Below, piece by piece: positions 47,371 through 63,914 of a stretch of DNA of 64,000 bases. Each line of letters starts with the position of its first letter. Position 1 is the first letter of the stretch. The DNA lies in assembly GCF_031769215.1 (NCBI RefSeq), contig NW_026781865.1:186001-250000 (forward strand), given 5' to 3'. Below the pieces are notes generated by a model, which saw only the letters and a program-made list of their open reading frames with translations, ran no database searches and was not told the origin of the DNA. The position numbers and the translations under genes were made by a program. Source of the DNA: Ylistrum balloti. Taxonomy: Eukaryota.

Positions 47371-50179
47371 TTTCAGGAATTTATTAATACTTTTTAACTT
47401 ATTACTGATTTGTTTGGTTATTATTGCCTGAAAATTGATAATTGATTTGGCAAAACATTACATGTGTATTATTTACTTTAATGGACACCAATTGTACGTC
47501 TGTTTATGTGTGAAAATACATAATTCTTACAAGAATAGGCTTGCACTTTTGTAAACAGAACAGTTTATCACACATGAAAAATTACAGTAATATAATAAAC
47601 ATACGTGTGAGGAAAATAAGTACAAAATGAAAAAAATAATGAATTGGATGGGAAACCAAACATACACCCAAACTATACACCATTATATCACAAAGATAGT
47701 TCAAGGAAAGAAATGAGTACAACTAACAACATCATTTTATTAATAAATGTTTGATATGTGGAAATGCTTTATTTGGTAAAAGGCAGTATCCATTTATCGG
47801 GGTGGTTTCTGACGGGCCTTGATGTAAGTGATTACAATTTGTCCTTTCGTTTGGTTCTTTTCCTTGGAGTTTCGTGTTTTAGCATTCTTGTTTTTTTTAG
47901 TGGATGGGTAATGAGGGTCGTTAGGTTTTCTTTTTTATTACTTGATTAACTGTTTAGTTTAACATTTTTGTTGAAATATTTCGCTTGCTGTCAGCACATA
48001 TATTTTGTCAATCAATTCCGAAAATGACAATAGCCCGAATAGGCAAACATATGAATTAAATCACAATATAAAAATAAAATTTAATTCAGCTATTATTTTT
48101 TTGTTTGTTTATCTATTTATCCATATATTTATTTTTTTTTTCTAATTATTTAGCAAGATTCTTTTTAAAATATACTTTGTTTTAATTGTAATTATTAAAT
48201 AAGAATATTACTCTTGTTGCAACGCTTTATATATATAATTTCTATAACAAAGCAGGTTTTCCACTTAGATAAGAGGACTGGTAATTTACACTTTGGGCGA
48301 ATAGATCTAATTGATTCAATAATATAATAATTGTTTTATGTAAATTGAATGTATACTGTTCTTATATTACTATATCAGTTTTCAAGGAGATAATAAACTG
48401 TGACTGTCGAACCCTGGAAATCGATTAATTTTTCAATTGATGATATTTCTTTCATTTATTCATACGACTATATACGGCATGAGAACTGTGACAAATAATA
48501 ATTTAATCAATAAACCCTTAAACATTTCTTACCCTTACCCAGTTTGTTTCAATGTCTTCTTCACAAAATAACAAATATTATACATTATTTCATAGAAATA
48601 TTTTGTATTGATTTGTGTATATGTGAATGATCTGATATTTGATAACGATTAACAGAATTAAATTTAAGCAAAAGATCTAAATCAATCTCGGGTGTTTAAC
48701 GTCTTATCATTTCAACTATTTCTTATGAACACAAGCAAAAATAGAGAATATGTTATAAAATTACAAGTTTAAAAGGGTAATATTATGAGATTGAGAAAGC
48801 AGAAATATTTCCATAATTTTATAAAAAAAAAAAAAAAACACTTTTTTCACCAATGCATACCTACACTAAATGCACCATGACAATATTATACGAAAAGTTC
48901 GCACATACATTAATGCGTTGAGTGGAAAATAAGTGAAGCAATAAGTTCATTTCTTTGCAGCACTTTAAATTGAGATGGTGTGAAAGGGACATAAATCCTA
49001 GCATCAATACAATTTAGATTATTTTAGATTATTAAATACTTTGGTTTAATGGTAATTTAAATGCATACAATGGATTATACTTACCTCGACTTAACTATTA
49101 AGTTACATATGTATTGCTTAATTCAATCCCTTAATGTTAACGTGAAAGTTAATAACCCTTACCCCATACTTGTACGATTGTTTACATCTGTGAAGACACT
49201 TTTTAACACTTTCCTTCAGGATTTGTCTTCCGACCCGATTTCAGCGGCGATCGCCCCAACCAACGTCGTATATTCATCGACCGGTCCTGTATACAAATAT
49301 AGTCACATCAAAAAACATTTGTATTAAAATGAAAGTGGTATATATTTCGGTAATTTTTTCTTTGATGCTCAATGCTCTTTTTTGATTGTTAAATGCATCA
49401 TTCAGTTGCATTGTGACAGATTTGTTTTTTACAATTGGTGATCGGAATCAACATTATTGCAATCACTTGTAAGCTTGCAGGTTATATGATTATGATTGTA
49501 AGAATCTCACCAAATGATATATTTGGAAAACTTTGTTGCCTCTGTTTACCAGTGAAGTGATCGGAATCTCCTGGAGTATTGTCAGGTATTGTAATGGTTG
49601 CCACAGGTTCCATTTTATTTGCTGGATAACATTAAGAATGTGACGATAATGTAATGTGAATTTATTCTCATACTTACATTTAAGACGCACTTACGATGCA
49701 ACAAGTAAATTTTGACTACTTTGAAAGTTAAATTTTAGACTGATCAACAATATAATAGGTATGTCTAACTATTTTCAAATGATTGAACGTATCCTACTTT
49801 ATAACGTTTCAAATGATAACACATCAAAAATAATTGACATAATAGGAAAAAGTTTTTATATTGTTTAGTTTGGATAATAATAACGACAGACGATAATAAT
49901 TTGTTTATTACACATTGCGTCAATGACTCTTCTCGCATGTTGTCGAATATGGACTATCAGAAAGAATTTATCTATATCTTACATTACCAAGGGGATGTTA
50001 CTCTAATCGCCAGTTATTATAACTTTTGTAACATTATGTTATATATGTAACATAAGTATGTGATTAGATGAAAAGAGGAATAAATCTTACAGTATAATGA
50101 AACGTAACTCTTATCGCAAGCTATTTTGACATGTGTAACATTATGTGACATATATAACATAAAAGTATGGTTAGGTGTA

Positions 50180-51130
50180 AAGAAAGTTAACCCAATTTTT
50201 AAAGAGGGTGAGAAAAGCGTTGTCAGTAACTATAGACCAATATCAGTTTTACCTGTCCTGTCTAAACTTCTAGAAAAACATGTTCATTCTACCTTGTATA
50301 GATTTTTAACAGAGCATAACTTAATTATTGAAAACCAATCTGGTTTTAGAAGTATGCATTCTTGTCAAACTGCTTTAACAGCTTTAACAAACAGCAACAG
50401 GGTGAAGTATAATGAGTGTATACTGATGTATAAAGTTATCAACAAACTATGTCCAAACTATCTAAATTGTAATACCCTGGTCTCCAATGTCCATAACAAG
50501 AAAACTAGGTCAGCAACTTCAGGTAAATATGTATTACCTCAACACAAAACTGAAAAATTTAAAAGTTCATTTATATACAATGGTCCTTTACTCTGGAACA
50601 GTTTACCAGTTACTGTGACTGGAAGTGGGACATTAAAAACTTTCAAGGTGGAATGCAAAAAACACTTTTTAAATCTATCTTAGTTATGATTCTAACTACT
50701 TTCCAGTGGCCTTGTAAGGTTTTAGTACTATGACTATCCAGTAACTTTTAGTTTAGAATTAAATGTCCATCTTTTTAGCTACAACCAATCAATTTTAATA
50801 TATGCTATATTAGCGTATAGTCGGTTAAATTTTATTATTTGTCACATTGACATATATGTATATTGGACACTTAAATATGTGTTTTAATTCCAATATATAT
50901 GCATCATGAGCTTTATGTAGTGCACTACTTTTAATTAATGATCCAAATTAAAACTATCATTATGTTCACTGTGATACATTTACTCTATATGTGATGTTAT
51001 AACCTTTTAATAATACAATGTAATTTAATGTTGTAAATACTGTACATTTTACTGTCGACCGCTTGTAAGAAGAGTCTTTGACTCAAAGTGTTATCGACCT
51101 GAAATAAAGTCTATTATTATTATTATTATC
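50180..51130 (+). mobile_element. 5'-truncated, internally deleted CR1/L2-clade LINE with 3'UTR and (TAT)n tail
   Basis: KVNPIFKEGEKSVVSNYRPISVLPVLSKLLEK..NQSGFRSMHSCQTAL is fused to C-terminal MYKVIN..RSA..FKSSFIYNGPLLWNSLP. 3' hairpin gagtc-ttt-gactc, AATAAA, and a tattattattattat tail. Confidence 0.9.
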
Positions 51131-57240: not shown

Positions 57241-60034
57241 CATAATCTCTCTAATAAGGTCACTTTAGTGACCTTCATCAAAAGATTTGTATCTTCAAAT
57301 TGTGAAACTAGCATAAAAATGTCTTTATTTTAACTGATTTCATTTGTGTGACCTTGTACAGAGGTCAAGTTCAACAATGTTAACCAAACTGATACAAATT
57401 GACATGAAAAAATACCTTGTCAAACAGCAAGACCTGCAGACTTTTGGTAATTAAGCTGTCACTATTTAACGAAAATGTTTCTTGGTTTTTTAAGCAAATG
57501 TGTAAAATGACAAATTTACCGGTTTTCATTTTTTCCAAGAATCCTTCGTTTGAAAGATATCATCTGTGGCCAACTTTTAAGCAAGTTTGAAAAATTGACT
57601 GGTTTCGGAAGTATGAAAATTGAAGTGTCCAAAACAGTACTTTTTTTCGAAAGTAATTGTTTTTAATATGAATTTTGGCTGTAATTTTCAACATTTAAGA
57701 AATGTTTCTCCTGAAAAAGTGTGATATGTGGTATCACAATGTTGGTTGGTACAATGTGCACACATTAATGACATAATTTCATTGGAATTGCCTTATAATA
57801 ATGCACTAGAAGGAATTACATTTAACTACTTTAACACCCACCAAGGCGGCAGTCAAGGAGCTTCCATTTTATAAGAAATCAATTCCGAGACTAACTTTTC
57901 CTTATTTAAGATTCTGATACCAATATCTGTTTATGGTTATCACATTTTGAAATTCCAAGTGGGGGCCGATGCTAATCTTAAATTCCCATTTATGTTGATC
58001 CCACCTTAAAGAGTTCAATAGAGTAGTACCAATCAATTAAATAAACTTTATCATACGGCTGTTTCATTCTTCTTGGACTCGTTGGTGACAGAGGAGTTTG
58101 GTGTTTAAAGGTTATCTACGTTTGCAAACATAACATTATATCTTCATTTTTACCGCAGTGCACTTTTTGTTTTGCAAAACAGACTCGATGGTTCGATTCT
58201 TTTCGTCTTTATTTCTCAAATTTTCAAACCAATAAAGAAAAAACCCTGTAAACAAAACACATACAGTACATACGTCTTACACACAAACAAACATACTTGC
58301 ATACATGGAATAGTAAAAGGGCAATAACTCTGTCGACAACTACTATTATAGAACAGATATATTCTATGAAATGTGCATAGGCAATGATATTTAGAAGTAT
58401 ATAATTTACAAATTTTACAAATGAATATATAAATTCATTTATCCAATCTAAACGGTGGTTATTATGTTCTTTATGAAAATATATATATATATATATCATT
58501 TCTTACAAAACTATTGCTGTAACTCACACAATTTACAAATATTTAGTTAAAAACACAGCTATAGCTTAAAACATCCCGAACCCATCAGACACTCACCCAA
58601 CAGCTATGGTGTGGAGGTTTCTTTGAATTTTTCCTCAATGTAAATATTCTGGATTATCCAACCAGAAGCTTTTCTCTAAAGTAATAAATTTACCTCATAA
58701 ATACTTGGAGACTTATGAACATATGGTAATACATAGAAATAGAATTCAACCAAAAGGATACTTTGATCTTAACAGACTCAATGTCACTTTGGCCTTGAAA
58801 TTACTCAATGCAAAAAAGTCCCAATTATAATTTTATAAGAATAATTGAATCAGATAAAGTTGTTTAACCTCAATTAAAATACAAAATTGTAGATTGCCTA
58901 CATTTTCAGAAGTATTGGTTATCCAAAAAGTATATTAAACAAATAAAATAAAAAAAATTCACCAGATAAATGCTTGAGTTCTCTCCAACTCGAAAACATG
59001 TCATGGTGTTACTGGTCAGGAGCAGAGTGCCCAAGGTGGCCGAAACCCCTATCCATGTAAACTAAGGCACCTACCCTGACCAATCATATTGCCTGTCCCA
59101 ATCACACATTTCCTTAAAAGCATTATCTTTAAATACAAAACATTATTTCATATTAGGACATAAGAAACCACGAAGTTAACATTGAAACAAGCAAAGTGCT
59201 TAGATACTTGGGCACAATAAGAATAAAACTCTCATAAATGGGAATGACCAAGATAGAGCAAGTCAGAGACTGACGCTCATTCCATCGTGCCTGACCATGT
59301 CCTTGTGCGAACATCGGAAGACATTTATACCATTGGGTTTGAGGAGCGGTAAACAGAAAACATGCTTGATCAAACGTCTTACGTCATTCTATGTCCGCTT
59401 TATATATTTTGTACATGGGGCCAAAGACATATTGCTAATGTATCAGGTTATTTTATATCCATGCCACTTCATGGTTGGTAGCATATAGCAATACCCTTGA
59501 CAGTCATTCCGTCTTGATTTAGATTCCACTCATCTATCTTTAATGAATTTTTTTATAGTCAATAACTTTTACGATGTGAAGGCAGTTAAAAAATCATCAA
59601 AACCGGCCAATATGAAAACCTTGTCTAACTTTAGTGTAAGTTTAAATAAACCCCTGCATTCGAATATTAAATTTCGTTTCAGATTATATACTATAGCTTC
59701 TGGAACTTCAGATTTATAGAACATTCTTTATTATCGATTCTGCAGACAGAGCATTGGTTTCCTTCCAGATTCTGTACCATGTACTTTTCAGTCGTGTATC
59801 CAATTTTATTCTTTACCATTGATTCAGTAAACACAACCTTTCATTTCCTTGCTCGTGAGTACACCTCCTATTACTCCTTTCAATTAAAGCCAAATTGCAC
59901 TAAATTGTTCCTAATTTCCTCCTTGGTCGTCGGGGTTTAATTTCTCTCTGACACAACTCGTTCTATATACTTATAGATCTTTACATCCCATGTAACTTTT
60001 TTAACTGAATTTAGACGCTCATCAAACATATTCA

Positions 60035-61273
60035 CTACGTAAATTTGATATATAACGATATATAAGAGCAGACACCTACTACAATGATAACTTCAGTTGA
60101 CCAGAATAGAGATCTATCAAGGAATCTAGTGACATCGCTTTTCAGTATTTGTTTCCTCTCCGTAAGGTTTACCTCAGCATCGGATTCGGAATTGGCTGAT
60201 ATTTCTTTATGCTTTCCAACCATTTTCCTAGCATCTCCTTTCCTTTCGCAGATATGCCGCTGAACAATATGTATTAACCATACAGGGAAATGGTCGATAT
60301 CTAGGTCTACATCACATATTAGAGACAGTATTGTCAGTAAGATAAGTAAACAACTGAAACACATTGTCCCAAGCAGAAAATAAGACGCACCAGCAATAGG
60401 ATCAGATACTTTAGGCATTACTTCCCCTATGCTTGACATATAAACTGCCATCGACAGAAACATGGTGACCGAAAACGAGATTCTTTCGCCAGAGGCGACT
60501 GGAAGAAGAAAAACAAATGGGTTAAGAAAGCATAATAGTAGAATGGGAATACACGTAGACAGAATAAAATATTGCGGTTTTCTCCTTAGATACAACGTGA
60601 ATTCAATCATAGATACAGCTTCGGACAATTTATAATTATAACTAACTGAAGTGCTATATATATCCCACGCACCGTTTGAAGCCAAAAAATCCATATAGAT
60701 TTTAGACCCGGTGAGGTTTAGTTTAACTTCTTGAATCGTGTACATCCACGGGACAATTATTATTCTACACACATGGGAATCAGTTGGAAAATAGGTCATG
60801 TCAATATCACAACTAGATTTTATCAGTTTTCCAGGATTAAAATTCACAGTTCCAGTATTCCACATCCTTATATCAAAACGATCGTCACCGAACTCCCTCA
60901 AGTCATCAGCGGACGAAATCACAAAAATTCTCGGTGTCCATACAAGTGATGAGTTCGAGACGTAATTTGTGATTCCATCATATAAACTCGTGTTCCATGC
61001 TAGTCTGTAATCTGTCCAGGTAATACCTAGAAAAGTGCTCAGTTGTATTGTTCCAGATATTTCGTCTAAATCTAGAAGAGCCATTACGAACAAAGACGTT
61101 TCGACATGAACAGTATCACCGATGTTACTGACCGGACGTAAATGTTTGCTGTAGTTTCGAAACAAATTTTCTTCCAACCGCCTGACATCTTCCATGCTTC
61201 CGGTTGCTTTGACAGACGTATACTCCAAACAACAAGTAAAAAATAGCAATAATATCATGCTTGCCATAGCCAT
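60035..61273 (-). CDS. Cys-loop ligand-gated ion channel subunit, nAChR-like non-alpha, intronless CDS, 412 aa
   Basis: Signal peptide; RL..NLFRNYSKHLRPV; WTDYRLAWN; WTPRI; Cys-loop CDIDMTYFPTDSHVC; LRRKPQYF-M1; GERISF-M2; M3; short loop; LDR-M4. No vicinal Cys in loop C. Confidence 0.95.
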   Translation of the reverse strand: MAMASMILLLFFTCCLEYTSVKATGSMEDVRRLEENLFRNYSKHLRPVSNIGDTVHVETSLFVMALLDLDEISGTIQLSTFLGITWTDYRLAWNTSLYDGITNYVSNSSLVWTPRIFVISSADDLREFGDDRFDIRMWNTGTVNFNPGKLIKSSCDIDMTYFPTDSHVCRIIIVPWMYTIQEVKLNLTGSKIYMDFLASNGAWDIYSTSVSYNYKLSEAVSMIEFTLYLRRKPQYFILSTCIPILLLCFLNPFVFLLPVASGERISFSVTMFLSMAVYMSSIGEVMPKVSDPIAGASYFLLGTMCFSCLLILLTILSLICDVDLDIDHFPVWLIHIVQRHICERKGDARKMVGKHKEISANSESDAEVNLTERKQILKSDVTRFLDRSLFWSTEVIIVVGVCSYISLYIKFT

Positions 61274-61625
61274 TCGTTTGTAATGTCTCTGTTTTCGTAC
61301 TCAGTCAAAACTCTTGAATCGGATATCTGAAAGTACATGCGAAAAAAAATTATTGTAATAAGCATTCATTAAAATCATGAAATATTTAAATTTATCCTAT
61401 GTTTATTTTTATGTATAGACTGGTATTGATAGAAATAACCTTTTAACAATCAATCGGATGTCCATGTTTTTTATTCTACCAATATTGTCTTATTGACTAC
61501 ATGCACTTACATAGAAATACCAATTCCAGGAAAACCTATCAATAAAATGATCAATACTATAATGTAGATGCTATAGTATCAAGTCTGCATGTTTTAGTAA
61601 TGTAATATTCTTTTAGAAATTTCAC

Positions 61626-61683: not shown

Positions 61684-63065
61684 CTGTAAGTTAAAAATAC
61701 TGACACTAGAGTATTGGACATCATTTAACAATCACGTACTTAATGTGTACTAGTTATATTTGAATATAAGGTGTATTTATCTATTTCCTATTTTACATAA
61801 TTCAGAAATAAACAATCCGCATAATAACACTTAACTTAAAACAAAAGCACCATTGATAAAAGTCTCTTTCATTGGTATGTAACTTTCAATACTAGATCGA
61901 TCGACTGTGTCAATATATTAGACCTACGAGTTTTTATTTTATTTGTATTTCATTAACAATTAGTACTTATCACTTGTGAAAATCCAGACAGAGATGATGT
62001 TTCTGTTATAACAATAGGTATCATTGACACGCACCAACCTATACCATTGTACTGACCATCATGATGCGTATAGATCCATCAAAGTTCCCTGGTAACTGGT
62101 CGTTTACACAAGCAAATAAAGCCTTTGTGCAAACACATACTATAGTGATTTTTGACAGGTATTCGATATTCGGAATGCCAAATAATAGAATTGCTTTACA
62201 CTGGTCGAACAAACTGTGATGTTACACTAGTTATAATATTGAAGGTATCAACTGTGGCCATATTCTTTTAGGTGAAATATAGCGTATCATTGTTGCAAAT
62301 TATCTATAGCATCTCCTCCGTTAAATATGGGGTAATCACAGATTTAATCATTTGAACTGAAAAAGCATATTTATTTCATTTATTTGTGCGAGATTTCGTC
62401 AGCTAACAGAAACATAACACAGGATCTCAAGACATGCAGATCGAGGAACAGTATGGGGTAGCTTTGCGATTGTTACAAATTGGAACGTGTCTAATGCTCC
62501 TCCGTATAACTGTTGATTTCATAACAGTTTACAGCGTCCCCTTTTGGGAACGTGACATTACTCACATTGATTAAGCAGAAGACGTTTACCTTTCCTGAAC
62601 ACGTGGTCTAATTCACCATGTTTTTTTTCAGGGTTATCCGTGTAAATATTTCTTTGATCATATGTTGCCCTAATTTAATCAATTTTGAGCTTTGGTTTTT
62701 AACCTTCTGGTAAGTGGTGTGGAACCATATTTTGGTGTGGGTGGGGGATATTTAGACTGGCGGATTCAATCATGCTGAAAACAAAACCAAAATAAACACA
62801 GAAACAAAAGTTTTAACAGTAATTTCCAAAGATGCTGCAGATAAGACATAACAAGTTGCTGTGTTTTACTTAAGTTTTGAGGTACTCTGAATTACGTGAT
62901 TGCAGTTACAAAAACGAAGACAATGCTATAGAATATTTTATATTCATTCTTTATTACACCAAACGAGGTGTTAAGACATCACTTATAATACTGAGAGATG
63001 CAATCTAGGCAATAGAGATGACACAAAAGATACACAAAATATCAAACAAATAACCTCTCTGAAAC

Positions 63066-63375
63066 ATAGATTATTACAAGCGAGTAACTTATTTCAAATA
63101 TAGATTATTACAAACAAGTAAATTCTCCCAAATGTAGATTATTACACCAAGTAAATTCTCCCAAATATAGATTATTACAAACAAGTAAAATCTCCTAAAT
63201 ATAGATTATTACAAACAAGTCAATTCTCCCAAATTTAGATTATTACAAACAAGTCAATTCTCCCAAATGTAGATTATTACAACCAAGTAAATTCTCCCAA
63301 ATATAGATTATTACAAACAAGTAAAATCTCCTAAATATAGATTATTACAAACAAGTAAATTCTCCCAAATGTAGA
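63066..63375. repeat. 34-bp minisatellite, ~9 copies (ATAGATTATTACAAACAAGTAAATTCTCCCAAAT)
   Basis: Directly visible. Confidence 0.95.
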
Positions 63376-63914
63376 TTACAGCAAATGCGCAGCTTATCCC
63401 AAATCAAGATTACTACAAAGGGCCATAAGATATATTAAAACAAAAGTTAAAGTTACAGTTAGGTAGAATGTATAGTCCTAAATAAGGAAGTACATCTTCA
63501 TATAAATTGTTTCCACCAAGTATCAATTTATATCCAACATATAATGTTAGATTTAGGTAATCAATATGATGTACAAAAAATTTTATCCAGAATCTTAGGT
63601 TTTGGAGGGAAAACATACTATCTTCCTTAAACAGCTGTTATCTGCTTATTATTCCTCAATATTTTAATCCCTGGCAAACGAATTTTGCTAAAACACGTGT
63701 TTCAGGTTATTGCTTCAAAGTGAATAACAAACAAACCCGTTGTATTGTATTGCTGACAATGGATCATCCTATTGTATTCGCTTGAATGAATTAACAAATC
63801 TCTCTGAGATTCTCCTGACTACATGCGAGCTAGATCGGATTTAATTCATTTATGATTAATATGGAATCGCCAATCAAACCGTTTGGAGGGTTGCAAAATA
63901 GTGGATTATTAAGC

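What the first reader, a model, noticed from the sequence alone, without database searches (positions are those of the whole stretch)
60035..61273. Intronless orphan nAChR-like channel with an eroded acetylcholine pocket: candidate chemosensory receptor
The Cys-loop and cation-type pore are kept (GE at -2'/-1', Leu 9', no -2' Pro). By manual alignment to alpha7, the agonist site is remodelled. Loop C (SYNYKLSEAVSMIEF) lacks the vicinal cysteines and the Y198 equivalent. Loop A Tyr is replaced (WTPRIFVISSAD). Loop D Trp is Phe. Only loop B Trp (WMYT) remains. The Cys-loop FPFD is FPTD, and the M3-M4 loop is only ~65 aa. Large intronless nAChR expansions in bivalves and nAChR-derived chemotactile receptors in cephalopods are established. 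This subunit fits a parallel non-ACh, environment-sensing channel, but its ligand is unknown.
Basis: partly seen in the sequence, partly recalled or inferred. Interest (0 to 1): 0.7.

Follow-up and report, generated by a model that had tools for sequence, protein, structure and literature searches.

The report
Scallop nicotinic-type channel gene, ordinary family member
This is an intact, selectively maintained single-exon gene for a nicotinic-receptor-like cation channel subunit in a scallop; its missing acetylcholine pocket is real but is shared by all 81 sister genes examined in this genome, a bivalve gene expansion already described in the literature.

Summary
Window 60035-61273 (-) is one 412-aa ORF with signal peptide, Cys-loop ligand-binding domain, four TM helices, a cation-type pore (G-E-R, Leu9', Glu20') and a short M3-M4 loop. 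It lacks the loop A Tyr, loop D Trp, the vicinal Cys pair and the second loop C Tyr.

The gene is not an orphan and its pocket is not special. The genome is Ylistrum balloti. It holds at least 101 nAChR-like matches, nearly all uninterrupted ORFs. Of 81 examined, none has the vicinal Cys pair or loop A Tyr, 5 keep loop D Trp, and about 95% keep Cys-loop, Glu-1' and Leu9'.

The gene has a 65%-identical paralogue on the same contig and single-exon orthologues in Mizuhopecten and Argopecten (clade support 100). Selection is purifying (omega 0.22 overall, 0.155 ligand-binding domain, 0.09 M1-M3), so it is maintained.

This is the known lophotrochozoan intronless nAChR expansion (Jiao 2019), and the non-ACh or chemosensory idea is already published. 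The clade profile matches alpha7 best, not octopus chemotactile receptors. No RNA data were reachable, so expression and ligand are untested. This scan noted the same gene class at two other loci of this genome. New member of a known kind; low to moderate interest.

The parts
60035..61273 (-). Complete single-exon CDS, 412 aa plus TAG stop, of an nAChR-like Cys-loop channel subunit
   Evidence: ORF list. Pfam LBD and TM domains. AF2 model with pLDDT 90.1 and a full nAChR fold. ORF intact in a second individual, with 3 synonymous and 2 non-synonymous SNPs and no indels.
61199..61273 (-). Signal peptide, residues 1 to about 25 (hydrophobic N-terminus ending ...VKATG)
   Evidence: Read directly from the sequence. 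AF2 helix 2-15, followed by the start of the mature domain that aligns to residue 1-4 of mature alpha7 and alpha3. The cleavage site itself is inferred.
60569..61198 (-). Extracellular ligand-binding domain, residues 26-235. Loop D Phe81, loop A Ile119 and loop B Trp176. N-glycosylation sequons at 40, 94, 107 and 186.
   Evidence: Pfam PF02931 covers residues 32-233. Alignments to alpha3, alpha6 and alpha7. Sequons. Omega 0.155.
60767..60811 (-). Cys-loop, C155-x13-C169, with FPTD in place of FPFD
   Evidence: The Cys pair is kept in 80 of 81 paralogues. The third FPxD residue is variable in the nearest paralogues (T/S/L/V/N/I/M) and is Phe in 51 of 81 overall.
60611..60646 (-). Loop C, residues 210-221. 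No vicinal Cys, Val220 at the Tyr198-equivalent position, and Tyr212 possibly at the Tyr190-equivalent position.
   Evidence: alignments. Within the subclade the loop has a semi-conserved pattern (hydrophobic at 214 and 216, Ser/Thr at 217, Val/Ala at 220, Ser at 221).
60308..60568 (-). M1-M2-M3 channel core, residues 236-322, almost invariant across the subclade
   Evidence: Subclade alignment. dN/dS 0.03-0.08 by counting and omega 0.089 by ML. AF2 helices 234-256, 263-285 and 291-322.
60413..60493 (-). M2 pore lining, residues 261-287: Gly-2', Glu-1', Arg0', Leu9' and Glu20' (cation-type)
   Evidence: Gly-2' in 79 of 81, Glu-1' in 77 of 81 and Leu9' in 79 of 81 paralogues.
60113..60307 (-). 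Short intracellular M3-M4 loop, residues 323-387, the least constrained part
   Evidence: AF2 pLDDT dips to 53-59 around residues 350-370. dN/dS is 0.2-0.5. The region is indel-rich in the subclade alignment.
60038..60112 (-). M4 helix and short C-terminus, residues 388-412
   Evidence: AF2 helix 378-411. Alignment.
59727..59941 (-). Candidate poly(A) signals: ATTAAA 93 nt, AATAAA 224 nt and AATAAA 302 nt after the stop codon
   Evidence: Pattern scan. Consensus matches only, with no transcript evidence.
61274..61350 (-). 5' flank: in-frame stop 30 nt upstream of the ATG (61301-61303), and a polypyrimidine tract plus CAG about 53 nt upstream (near 61327) that could be the acceptor of a 5'-UTR intron
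   Evidence: The stop is shown directly by the sequence. The acceptor is speculative, with no RNA data.

Best explanation
This is a functional, selectively maintained single-exon gene of the saucer scallop Ylistrum balloti. It encodes one subunit of a pentameric Cys-loop cation channel.

It belongs to the alpha7-derived, non-alpha, intronless nAChR-like expansion that is already described for bivalves. That expansion arose by retroposition followed by tandem and dispersed duplication.

Shown here:
- The protein has a signal peptide, a ligand-binding domain with an intact Cys-loop, four TM helices and a short intracellular loop.
- The pore carries the cation-selective signature (Glu-1', no Pro-2', Leu9' gate, Glu20').
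- Four of the five aromatic-box positions and the vicinal disulfide of the classical ACh site are replaced. Only loop B Trp is surely kept.
- This pocket state is ancestral to the whole clade, not a feature of this gene.

Inferred:
- An interface made only of such subunits cannot form a classical ACh site.
- The pocket positions are constrained and carry orthogroup-specific signatures.
- I therefore judge it most likely (about 40%) that the channel is gated at the orthosteric site by a ligand other than ACh. A structural role beside canonical alpha subunits comes next (about 30%), then non-classical gating by ACh or choline through loop B Trp (about 15%).

Expression site and ligand are unknown.
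For: Identity:
- Pfam LBD and TM domains.
- Best solved relatives are alpha3, alpha6 and alpha7 at about 1e-43. The clade profile scores alpha7 at 284 bits.
- AF2 pLDDT 90.1 with a full nAChR fold.

Species:
- Fourteen paralogous ORFs are 100% identical to NCBI Ylistrum balloti proteins.

Family context:
- At least 101 matches in the genome, nearly all uninterrupted ORFs.
- Of 81 examined, all encode ORFs of 251-482 aa. None has the vicinal Cys pair or loop A Tyr, 5 keep loop D Trp, 55 keep loop B Trp, 80 keep the Cys-loop, 77 have Glu-1' and 79 have Leu9'.
- The same pattern holds in public pectinid, Pinctada and Mya relatives.

Orthology:
- The subclade holds L001, L002, Mizuhopecten P0001 and Argopecten P0002-P0005 with SH-aLRT 100.
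- Orthologue gene models are single-exon and sit next to other nAChR genes.

Selection:
- NG86 dN/dS is about 0.2 overall and 0.03-0.08 in M1-M3.
- ML omega is 0.22 overall, 0.155 in the ligand-binding domain and 0.089 in M1-M3.
- A second individual has an intact ORF with 3 synonymous and 2 non-synonymous SNPs.

Pocket:
- Pocket positions are more variable between paralogues than the rest of the ligand-binding domain (2.15 vs 1.54 bits, permutation p 0.0006).
- They are 56% identical within orthogroups against 27% between them.

Literature:
- Jiao 2019 (PMC6896357) reports 99-217 nAChR genes in bivalves, mostly intronless and tandem, with only 13 of 132 oyster genes keeping the full principal site.
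Against: - There is no expression evidence for this gene. The only public run holding it is DNA.
- Its exact protein, and that of paralogue L002, are absent from public protein collections. Public annotation therefore either missed it or found no support for it.
- Jiao 2019 reports that intron-poor nAChR genes are more often silent than intron-rich ones: 7.7% vs 3.6% in oyster and 31% vs 7.5% in pearl oyster.
- dS between subclade members is near saturation (1.0-2.7), so the pairwise dN/dS values are rough. The ML estimate agrees with them.
- Higher variability at pocket loops is also what surface loops show in any family, so it does not by itself show ligand diversification.
- The related orphan Alpo4 has resisted ligand identification. 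A remodelled pocket does not guarantee a findable ligand.
Confidence: 0.85

Rival explanations
1. Environment-sensing (chemosensory) receptor. The subclade forms channels in exposed epithelia such as mantle edge, tentacles or gill. These channels would be gated by external small molecules, in parallel to cephalopod chemotactile receptors.
For: - The pocket is remodelled to mostly aliphatic or hydrophobic residues (Phe81, Ile119, Val220) while the gate and pore stay intact.
- Pocket positions diversify between paralogues yet stay partly conserved within orthogroups.
- The gene structure and expansion mode (intronless, duplicated) match those of the CRs.
- Jiao 2019 finds the highest nAChR expression in bivalve gills, where ChAT is not expressed.
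- CRT1 uses a hydrophobic orthosteric pocket.
Against: - There are no tissue data for this gene.
- The clade is not specifically related to the CRs.
- Omega in the ligand-binding domain is 0.155, with no sign of the positive selection reported for CR pocket residues. Site tests were not feasible with 8 sequences.
- Gill expression with stress or immune responsiveness fits internal, non-neuronal signalling equally well.
Confidence: 0.2
2. Structural or accessory subunit. It co-assembles with canonical alpha-type subunits and contributes no agonist site, as vertebrate beta1, beta3 and alpha5 do. It would tune conductance, trafficking or desensitisation of ACh-gated receptors.
For: - It lacks both principal-face residues (loop A Tyr, CC, loop C Tyr) and the complementary-face Trp, as non-binding subunits do.
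- The pore and the Cys-loop coupling elements are highly conserved.
- The genome also shows about a dozen exon-sized matches of 170-220 aa to a canonical CC-bearing query. These suggest that intron-containing canonical genes exist as possible partners.
Against: - At least 81 such genes would be a very large pool of accessory subunits for few alpha partners.
- Pocket positions keep orthogroup-specific conservation (0.56 within vs 0.27 between, up to 0.84 in one orthogroup), which is not expected for faces that bind nothing.
Confidence: 0.3
3. Still cholinergic. It would be gated by ACh, choline or a related quaternary amine through a non-classical pocket built around the retained loop B Trp.
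For: - Loop B Trp, the main cation-pi partner, is kept here and in 55 of 81 paralogues.
- Tyr212 may occupy the first loop C Tyr position.
- Phe81 keeps an aromatic ring at loop D.
- Alpo4 binds the quaternary ammonium of CHAPS through loop B Trp.
Against: - Loop A Tyr, the second loop C Tyr and the disulfide are all missing.
- Alpo4 keeps far more of the box, yet responds to neither ACh nor serotonin.
- Octopus CRs with similar losses do not respond to ACh, according to De Gieter 2023 citing van Giesen 2020.
Confidence: 0.15
4. Silent retrocopy or young pseudogene whose ORF is open by chance.
For: - It is absent from public protein sets.
- Intron-poor nAChR genes are more often unexpressed in other bivalves.
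- No RNA evidence was found.
Against: - The ORF and those of all seven subclade members are intact despite about 35-43% amino-acid divergence and dS of at least 1.
- Omega is 0.22 overall and 0.089 in the channel core.
- The ORF is intact in a second individual.
Confidence: 0.03

Closest known systems
Bivalve/lophotrochozoan intronless nAChR expansion (Jiao et al. 2019, BMC Genomics 20:937, PMC6896357)
   Same: - Single-exon CDS with LBD-NTM architecture.
- Lineage-specific duplication in arrays.
- Mostly non-alpha subunits, with ACh-site residues replaced.
- Cation-type pore.
- The scallop Mizuhopecten was among the species counted (138 genes).
   Different: Nothing in kind. This particular Ylistrum gene, and its paralogue L002, are simply not in public protein sets. 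The present census adds that in this genome 0 of 81 single-exon members keep the vicinal Cys pair or loop A Tyr.
Human alpha7 / alpha3 / alpha6 neuronal nAChR subunits (PDB 9viq, 6pv7, 8zrn)
   Same: - Best sequence and fold matches.
- Cys-loop, loop B Trp, the M1-M3 core, Glu-1', Leu9' and Glu20'.
   Different: - No vicinal Cys, no loop A Tyr, no second loop C Tyr, and loop D Trp replaced by Phe.
- FPTD instead of FPFD.
- Loop C is 4 residues shorter than in alpha7.
- The M3-M4 loop is about 65 aa, against well over 100 aa.
- The CDS is intronless.
Cephalopod chemotactile receptors (CRT1 9e6b, CR518 8eis; van Giesen 2020, Allard 2023)
   Same: - Intronless nAChR-derived subunits with the classical ACh residues replaced and the Cys-loop and pore kept.
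- Comparable size, about 380-410 aa.
- Family expansion.
   Different: - Not the same clade. Single-sequence scores are 137.5 and 133.5 bits against 146-151 for alpha7 and alpha3. With the clade profile the CRs drop out of the best 60.
- CR pocket residues are reported to be under positive selection. Here the ligand-binding domain has omega 0.155.
- CR function (hydrophobic ligands, sucker sensory cells) is demonstrated. Nothing is demonstrated here.
Alpo4, orphan nAChR-like receptor of the annelid Alvinella pompejana (PDB 8bx5; De Gieter et al. 2023, eLife, PMC10338036)
   Same: - A lophotrochozoan nAChR-like subunit without the loop C disulfide.
- Member of the expanded repertoire, with an unknown ligand.
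   Different: - Alpo4 keeps the aromatic residues of loops A-D (F103, W159, Y199, Y205, W65) and has a Met ring constricting the pore.
- The scallop protein has lost most of the box and keeps a standard Leu9' pore.
- The sequence match is weaker, 113 bits.

Membership tests
Cys-loop pentameric ligand-gated ion channel (Pfam PF02931 + PF02932) | Ligand-binding domain and TM-region profile matches above the curated cut-offs | tested here: met
   PF02931 scores 152.5 bits (cut-off 26). PF02932 scores 36.6 bits (cut-off 28.1).
Cys-loop pentameric ligand-gated ion channel (Pfam PF02931 + PF02932) | Cys-x13-Cys loop, four TM helices and a beta-sandwich extracellular domain | tested here: met
   C155-x13-C169. 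The AF2 model has pLDDT 90.1, 10+ strands and helices 234-256, 263-285, 291-322 and 378-411. Foldseek top hits are all nAChR chains at about E 1e-31.
nAChR alpha subunit | Vicinal Cys-Cys at the tip of loop C | tested here: not met
   Tyr214 and Leu216 occupy the aligned positions, and there is no CC anywhere in loop C.
Classical acetylcholine orthosteric site (aromatic box) | Loop A Tyr, loop B Trp, two loop C Tyr and loop D Trp | tested here: not met
   Ile119, Trp176, Tyr212(?), Val220 and Phe81. One residue is surely kept and one possibly kept, out of five.
Cation-selective nAChR/5-HT3-type pore | Glu at -1', no Pro at -2', Leu at 9', and an acidic outer ring at 20' | tested here: met
   Gly262, Glu263, Arg264, Leu273 and Glu284. 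Selectivity itself is inferred from the motif and was not measured.
Bivalve intronless nAChR expansion (Jiao 2019) | Uninterrupted CDS | tested here: met
   One ORF runs from the signal peptide to M4. An upstream in-frame stop bounds it. Orthologue models are single-exon.
Bivalve intronless nAChR expansion (Jiao 2019) | Many lineage-specific paralogues, often in arrays | tested here: met
   At least 101 matches from 229 candidates, with arrays such as C411:2.077-2.143 Mb and C345:170-217 kb. This gene itself is not in a tight array: its nearest paralogue is 204 kb away on contig C8. Its Mizuhopecten and Argopecten orthologues do have nAChR neighbours within 5-10 kb.
Cephalopod chemotactile receptors | Phylogenetic placement in the CR clade | tested here: inconclusive
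   No CR sequences were available by reference for a tree. As a proxy, the clade profile ranks alpha7 first at 284 bits and the CRs fall below 236 bits, which argues against membership.
Cephalopod chemotactile receptors | Expression in sensory epithelium and gating by poorly soluble environmental ligands | not testable with these tools
   The only run holding the locus is DNA. Electrophysiology is needed.

The most novel reading that the evidence does not exclude
The seven-gene pectinid subclade (this gene, L002, Mizuhopecten P0001 and Argopecten P0002-P0005) forms cation channels in exposed scallop epithelia such as mantle tentacles or gill. These channels would be gated by an external, non-cholinergic small molecule. 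That would be an ionotropic chemoreceptor line that arose from alpha7-type nAChRs independently of the cephalopod chemotactile receptors.
Probability: 0.2. Interest if true: 0.6.

Novelty: new member of a known kind. Interest (0 to 1): 0.25.

Why it matters
The gene adds one unannotated but intact and constrained member, plus a defined seven-gene pectinid orthogroup, to a known family. That family is the largest unexplored set of ligand-gated channels in bivalves.

The useful general result is the genome-level census. Every one of the 81 single-exon members examined has given up the classical ACh site while keeping the gate and the cation pore. Pocket positions also carry orthogroup-specific signatures.

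That sharpens an already published hypothesis, that these channels respond to non-ACh ligands. It also offers compact, intronless orthogroups of about 1.2 kb that are easy to clone for deorphanisation. It does not open a new question by itself.

Tried and rejected
1. Expression. The look-up of sequencing runs (kind rna) returned a single run. Laying it showed even contig cover over the gene and both flanks, so it is DNA from another individual. It gives no expression evidence either way.

2. Scallop expression tables. The Jiao 2019 supplement held as text covers only oyster and pearl oyster by its caption. I did not pursue it.

3. Full census. The census therefore covers 81 of the 101 scored matches. 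The exon-sized matches to a canonical CC-bearing query could not be inspected.

4. Tree with cephalopod CRs and human subunits. No referenced sequences of these were available, and I did not type sequences from memory. I used PDB profile ranking as a proxy instead.

5. Careful ML tree. It did not finish in the time limit, so the quick IQ-TREE result with SH-aLRT support is what I report.

6. Pseudogene reading. Rejected on omega and on ORF integrity.

7. Retrogene hallmarks. No poly(A) tail remnant (A-run of 8 or more) lies downstream, and no flanking direct repeats were found around the gene. This is as expected for an old copy.

8. Complex prediction. Not used, because the report does not claim a specific partner and a pentamer exceeds the size limit.

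9. Site-wise positive-selection tests. Not attempted, because 8 sequences with saturated dS give no power.
Full report
**1. Observation**

The window holds a single ORF at 60035-61273 on the minus strand, 412 aa from ATG to TAG. An in-frame stop lies 30 nt upstream of the ATG, so no upstream coding exon is needed.

Pfam finds the neurotransmitter-gated channel ligand-binding domain (1.4e-44, residues 32-233) and the TM region (7.6e-9). The best solved relatives are human alpha3, alpha6 and alpha7 nAChR subunits (E about 1e-43 to 1e-41). Octopus CRT1 and CR518 come slightly behind (5.7e-39 and 9.1e-38), and Alvinella Alpo and 5-HT3A further down.

| Element | Canonical | This protein |
|---|---|---|
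| Loop D | Trp55 | Phe81 |
| Loop A | Tyr93 | Ile119 |
| Loop B | Trp149 | Trp176 (kept) |
| Loop C Cys pair | Cys-Cys | Tyr214 / Leu216 |
| Loop C second Tyr | Tyr198 equivalent | Val220 |
| Cys-loop | C-x13-C, FPFD | C155-x13-C169, FPTD |
| M2 | cation type | Gly-2', Glu-1', Arg0', Leu9', Glu20' |

One refinement: in the alpha3 alignment Tyr212 takes the place of the first loop C Tyr, so that residue may survive.

An AlphaFold2 model built on 61 homologues is confident (pLDDT 90.1). It shows the beta-sandwich domain, M1-M3, a short intracellular segment and M4. Foldseek returns only nAChR chains at the top. The M3-M4 segment is about 65 residues.

**2. Organism and family context**

Fourteen of the closest paralogous ORFs in the same assembly are 100% identical to NCBI proteins of Ylistrum balloti, the saucer scallop. 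The assembly is 648 Mb in 1372 contigs, and the window is C8:186001-250000.

A six-frame search of the assembly with the protein gave 101 scored matches out of 229 candidates. Nearly all are uninterrupted open frames of 400-500 aa. I extracted 81 of them.

All 81 give ATG-to-stop ORFs of 251-482 aa that match the query by phmmer. Aligned to the query, they show:

| Feature | Kept in |
|---|---|
| Vicinal Cys pair in loop C | 0 of 81 |
| Loop A Tyr | 0 of 81 |
| Loop D Trp | 5 of 81 (Gly, Val or Ile are commonest) |
| Loop B Trp | 55 of 81 |
| Both Cys-loop cysteines | 80 of 81 |
| Gly-2' | 79 of 81 |
| Glu-1' | 77 of 81 |
| Arg or Lys at 0' | 80 of 81 |
| Leu9' | 79 of 81 |

The same pattern holds in public relatives from Mizuhopecten, Argopecten, Pecten, Pinctada and Mya. 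Only one distant hit (P0069, 24% identity) has the classical W/CC/Y set. The FPTD variant is also ordinary: the third residue of FPxD is T, S, L, V, N, I or M in all of the nearest paralogues.

The 'eroded pocket with a preserved cation pore' is therefore the default state of the whole intronless clade. It predates the split of scallops from pearl oysters. It is not a peculiarity of this gene.

**3. Not an orphan**

The closest paralogue (L002, 65% identity, 422 aa) lies 204 kb away on the same contig. Public searches find Mizuhopecten P0001 (62%) and four Argopecten proteins (57-62%).

In a quick ML tree of 75 pectinid, Pinctada and Mya sequences these seven form a clade with SH-aLRT 100. Its sister is L003 plus Mizuhopecten P0015, with support 97. 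Within the clade the query pairs weakly (80) with Argopecten P0005.

The orthologues' public gene models are single-exon and sit beside other nAChR genes.

The exact proteins of the query and of L002 are not in the 15-billion-sequence collection, and no hit of 90% or more appeared. Both genes therefore seem to be missing from the public annotation, like several other intact paralogues (L003, L008, L017, L019-L022).

**4. Is it maintained?**

- Pairwise Nei-Gojobori estimates give dN/dS of about 0.2 over the whole gene. By region they are 0.10-0.25 in the ligand-binding domain, 0.03-0.08 in M1-M3 for the older (between-species and L001-L002) pairs and about 0.17-0.19 for the recent Argopecten paralogue pairs, and 0.2-0.8 in the intracellular loop. 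dS is high (1.0-2.7), so these values are rough.
- An ML codon model (GY+F3X4, 8 sequences) gives omega 0.22 overall, 0.155 for the ligand-binding domain and 0.089 for M1-M3.
- The M1-M3 core is almost invariant across the subclade.
- A public run holds the locus at even depth over the gene and flanks, so it is DNA from another individual. It shows five SNPs in the CDS (three synonymous, plus N186T and K22Q) and no indels.

This is a constrained protein-coding gene, not a decaying retrocopy.

**5. The pocket**

Positions homologous to loops A-E of the ACh site are more variable among paralogues than the rest of the ligand-binding domain. Among the 22 nearest paralogues the values are 2.15 vs 1.54 bits (permutation p 0.0006). 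Among all 81 they are 3.17 vs 2.34 bits. The M1-M3 core is the least variable, at 0.88 bits.

Across 11 orthogroups, pocket positions are 56% identical within groups and 27% between groups. The rest of the domain gives 66% and 43%. In two orthogroups the pocket is as conserved as the scaffold, 0.84 vs 0.81 and 0.67 vs 0.64. In the query's group it is 0.51 vs 0.68.

The site is thus faster-evolving but not free, and it carries orthogroup-specific signatures. This fits a diversified binding site. Surface loops vary in any family, however, so it is suggestive only.

**6. Relation to known systems**

Jiao et al. 2019 (PMC6896357) described this phenomenon:
- Bivalves have 99-217 nAChR genes, mostly intronless through retroposition followed by tandem duplication.
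- Only 33 of 132 oyster genes are alpha-type, and only 13 keep the full principal site.
- They suggest that the diverse ligand-binding domains bind diverse ligands.
- Expression is highest in gill, with stress and immune responses.

De Gieter et al. 2023 (PMC10338036) solved the orphan lophotrochozoan receptor Alpo4 and drew the same parallel to octopus chemotactile receptors. The MolluscaGenes preprint (PMC13174522) resolves 15 molluscan clades. It notes clades with substituted ligand-binding residues, proposes an ionotropic chemosensory role, and reports a CR-like clade that reaches into bivalves.

I could not place the scallop clade in that scheme, because no CR sequences were available by reference. 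As a proxy, a profile of the clade scores alpha7 highest (284 bits), then alpha6, alpha3, alpha1, alpha4, the beta subunits and 5-HT3A. The octopus CRs fall outside the best 60, below 236 bits.

This scan had already noted the same class at two other loci of this genome (s1-238081 and s1-258787). A follow-up on s1-258787 reached the same conclusion.

**7. Mechanism and odds**

Shown:
- The gene encodes a secreted-signal, four-TM Cys-loop subunit with a cation-type pore and an intact gate.
- It is under purifying selection.
- Both its principal and complementary faces lack most classical ACh contacts.

Inferred: it assembles into pentamers that conduct cations. For the gating ligand I put about 40% on a non-ACh ligand at the orthosteric site. 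About half of that 40% would be an external, chemosensory cue. I put about 30% on a non-binding accessory role beside canonical alpha subunits. About a dozen exon-sized matches to a CC-bearing query suggest that such intron-containing genes exist, but I could not inspect them. I put about 15% on non-classical ACh or choline gating through loop B Trp, and about 3% on a silent copy.

No expression data could be obtained.

**8. Verdict**

The gene is a new, unannotated member of a known kind, and the functional hypothesis is already in print and remains untested. Interest is low to moderate. Its practical value is as one compact, constrained orthogroup for deorphanisation experiments.

Noticed in passing
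window 63011-63451: Minisatellite with a 34-bp unit, about 9-13 copies, roughly 1.7 kb upstream of the channel gene. The other individual's contigs skip 135 nt here (63120-63256), about four units, so the array is length-polymorphic.
   Followed up: partly
window 18913-22569 (+): Open frame of 1218 aa with no Pfam hit and a very Ser/Thr/Pro-rich composition (S 24%, T 16%, P 8%). It contains a small 42-nt repeat at 21552-21687. It looks like a large mucin-type exon. The GC content (0.44) and the GC skew stand out from the rest of the window.
   Followed up: partly
window 50126-50683 (+): ORF of 185 aa with a partial reverse-transcriptase domain (RVT_1, 2.2e-8), a retroelement fragment.
   Followed up: no
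G000 loci L001, L002, L003, L008, L017, L019-L022: Nine of the 22 nearest intact single-exon nAChR-like ORFs have no identical protein among the public hits. The other 13 are 100% identical to NCBI Ylistrum balloti proteins. The public annotation of this family therefore looks incomplete.
   Followed up: partly
L034:19862-21200 (Argopecten irradians CM084278.1): The public model P0002 is 555 aa spliced over 18 kb. A single ORF in the last 1.3 kb already encodes a complete 411-aa subunit with its own signal peptide. The public model probably joins foreign upstream exons.
   Followed up: partly
L001 vs L002, residues 236-322 (window 60308-60568): Synonymous divergence between the two Ylistrum paralogues is lower in M1-M3 (pS 0.39) than in the ligand-binding domain (pS 0.57). 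This could reflect old gene conversion or constraint on codons or RNA in the channel core.
   Followed up: no
G000: C53:60130-60672, C240:2020331-2020846, C179:787088-787594, C712:156115-156615 and others: About a dozen open frames of 170-220 aa match only residues ~120-310 of a canonical CC-bearing nAChR query. This is the pattern expected for exons of intron-containing, possibly classical, nAChR genes.
   Followed up: no
G000:C411:2076700-2144200: A dense array of at least 13 single-exon nAChR-like ORFs within about 67 kb, in mixed orientations, including near-identical pairs such as L044/L045 and L050/L059. It is one of the largest arrays of the family in this genome.
   Followed up: no
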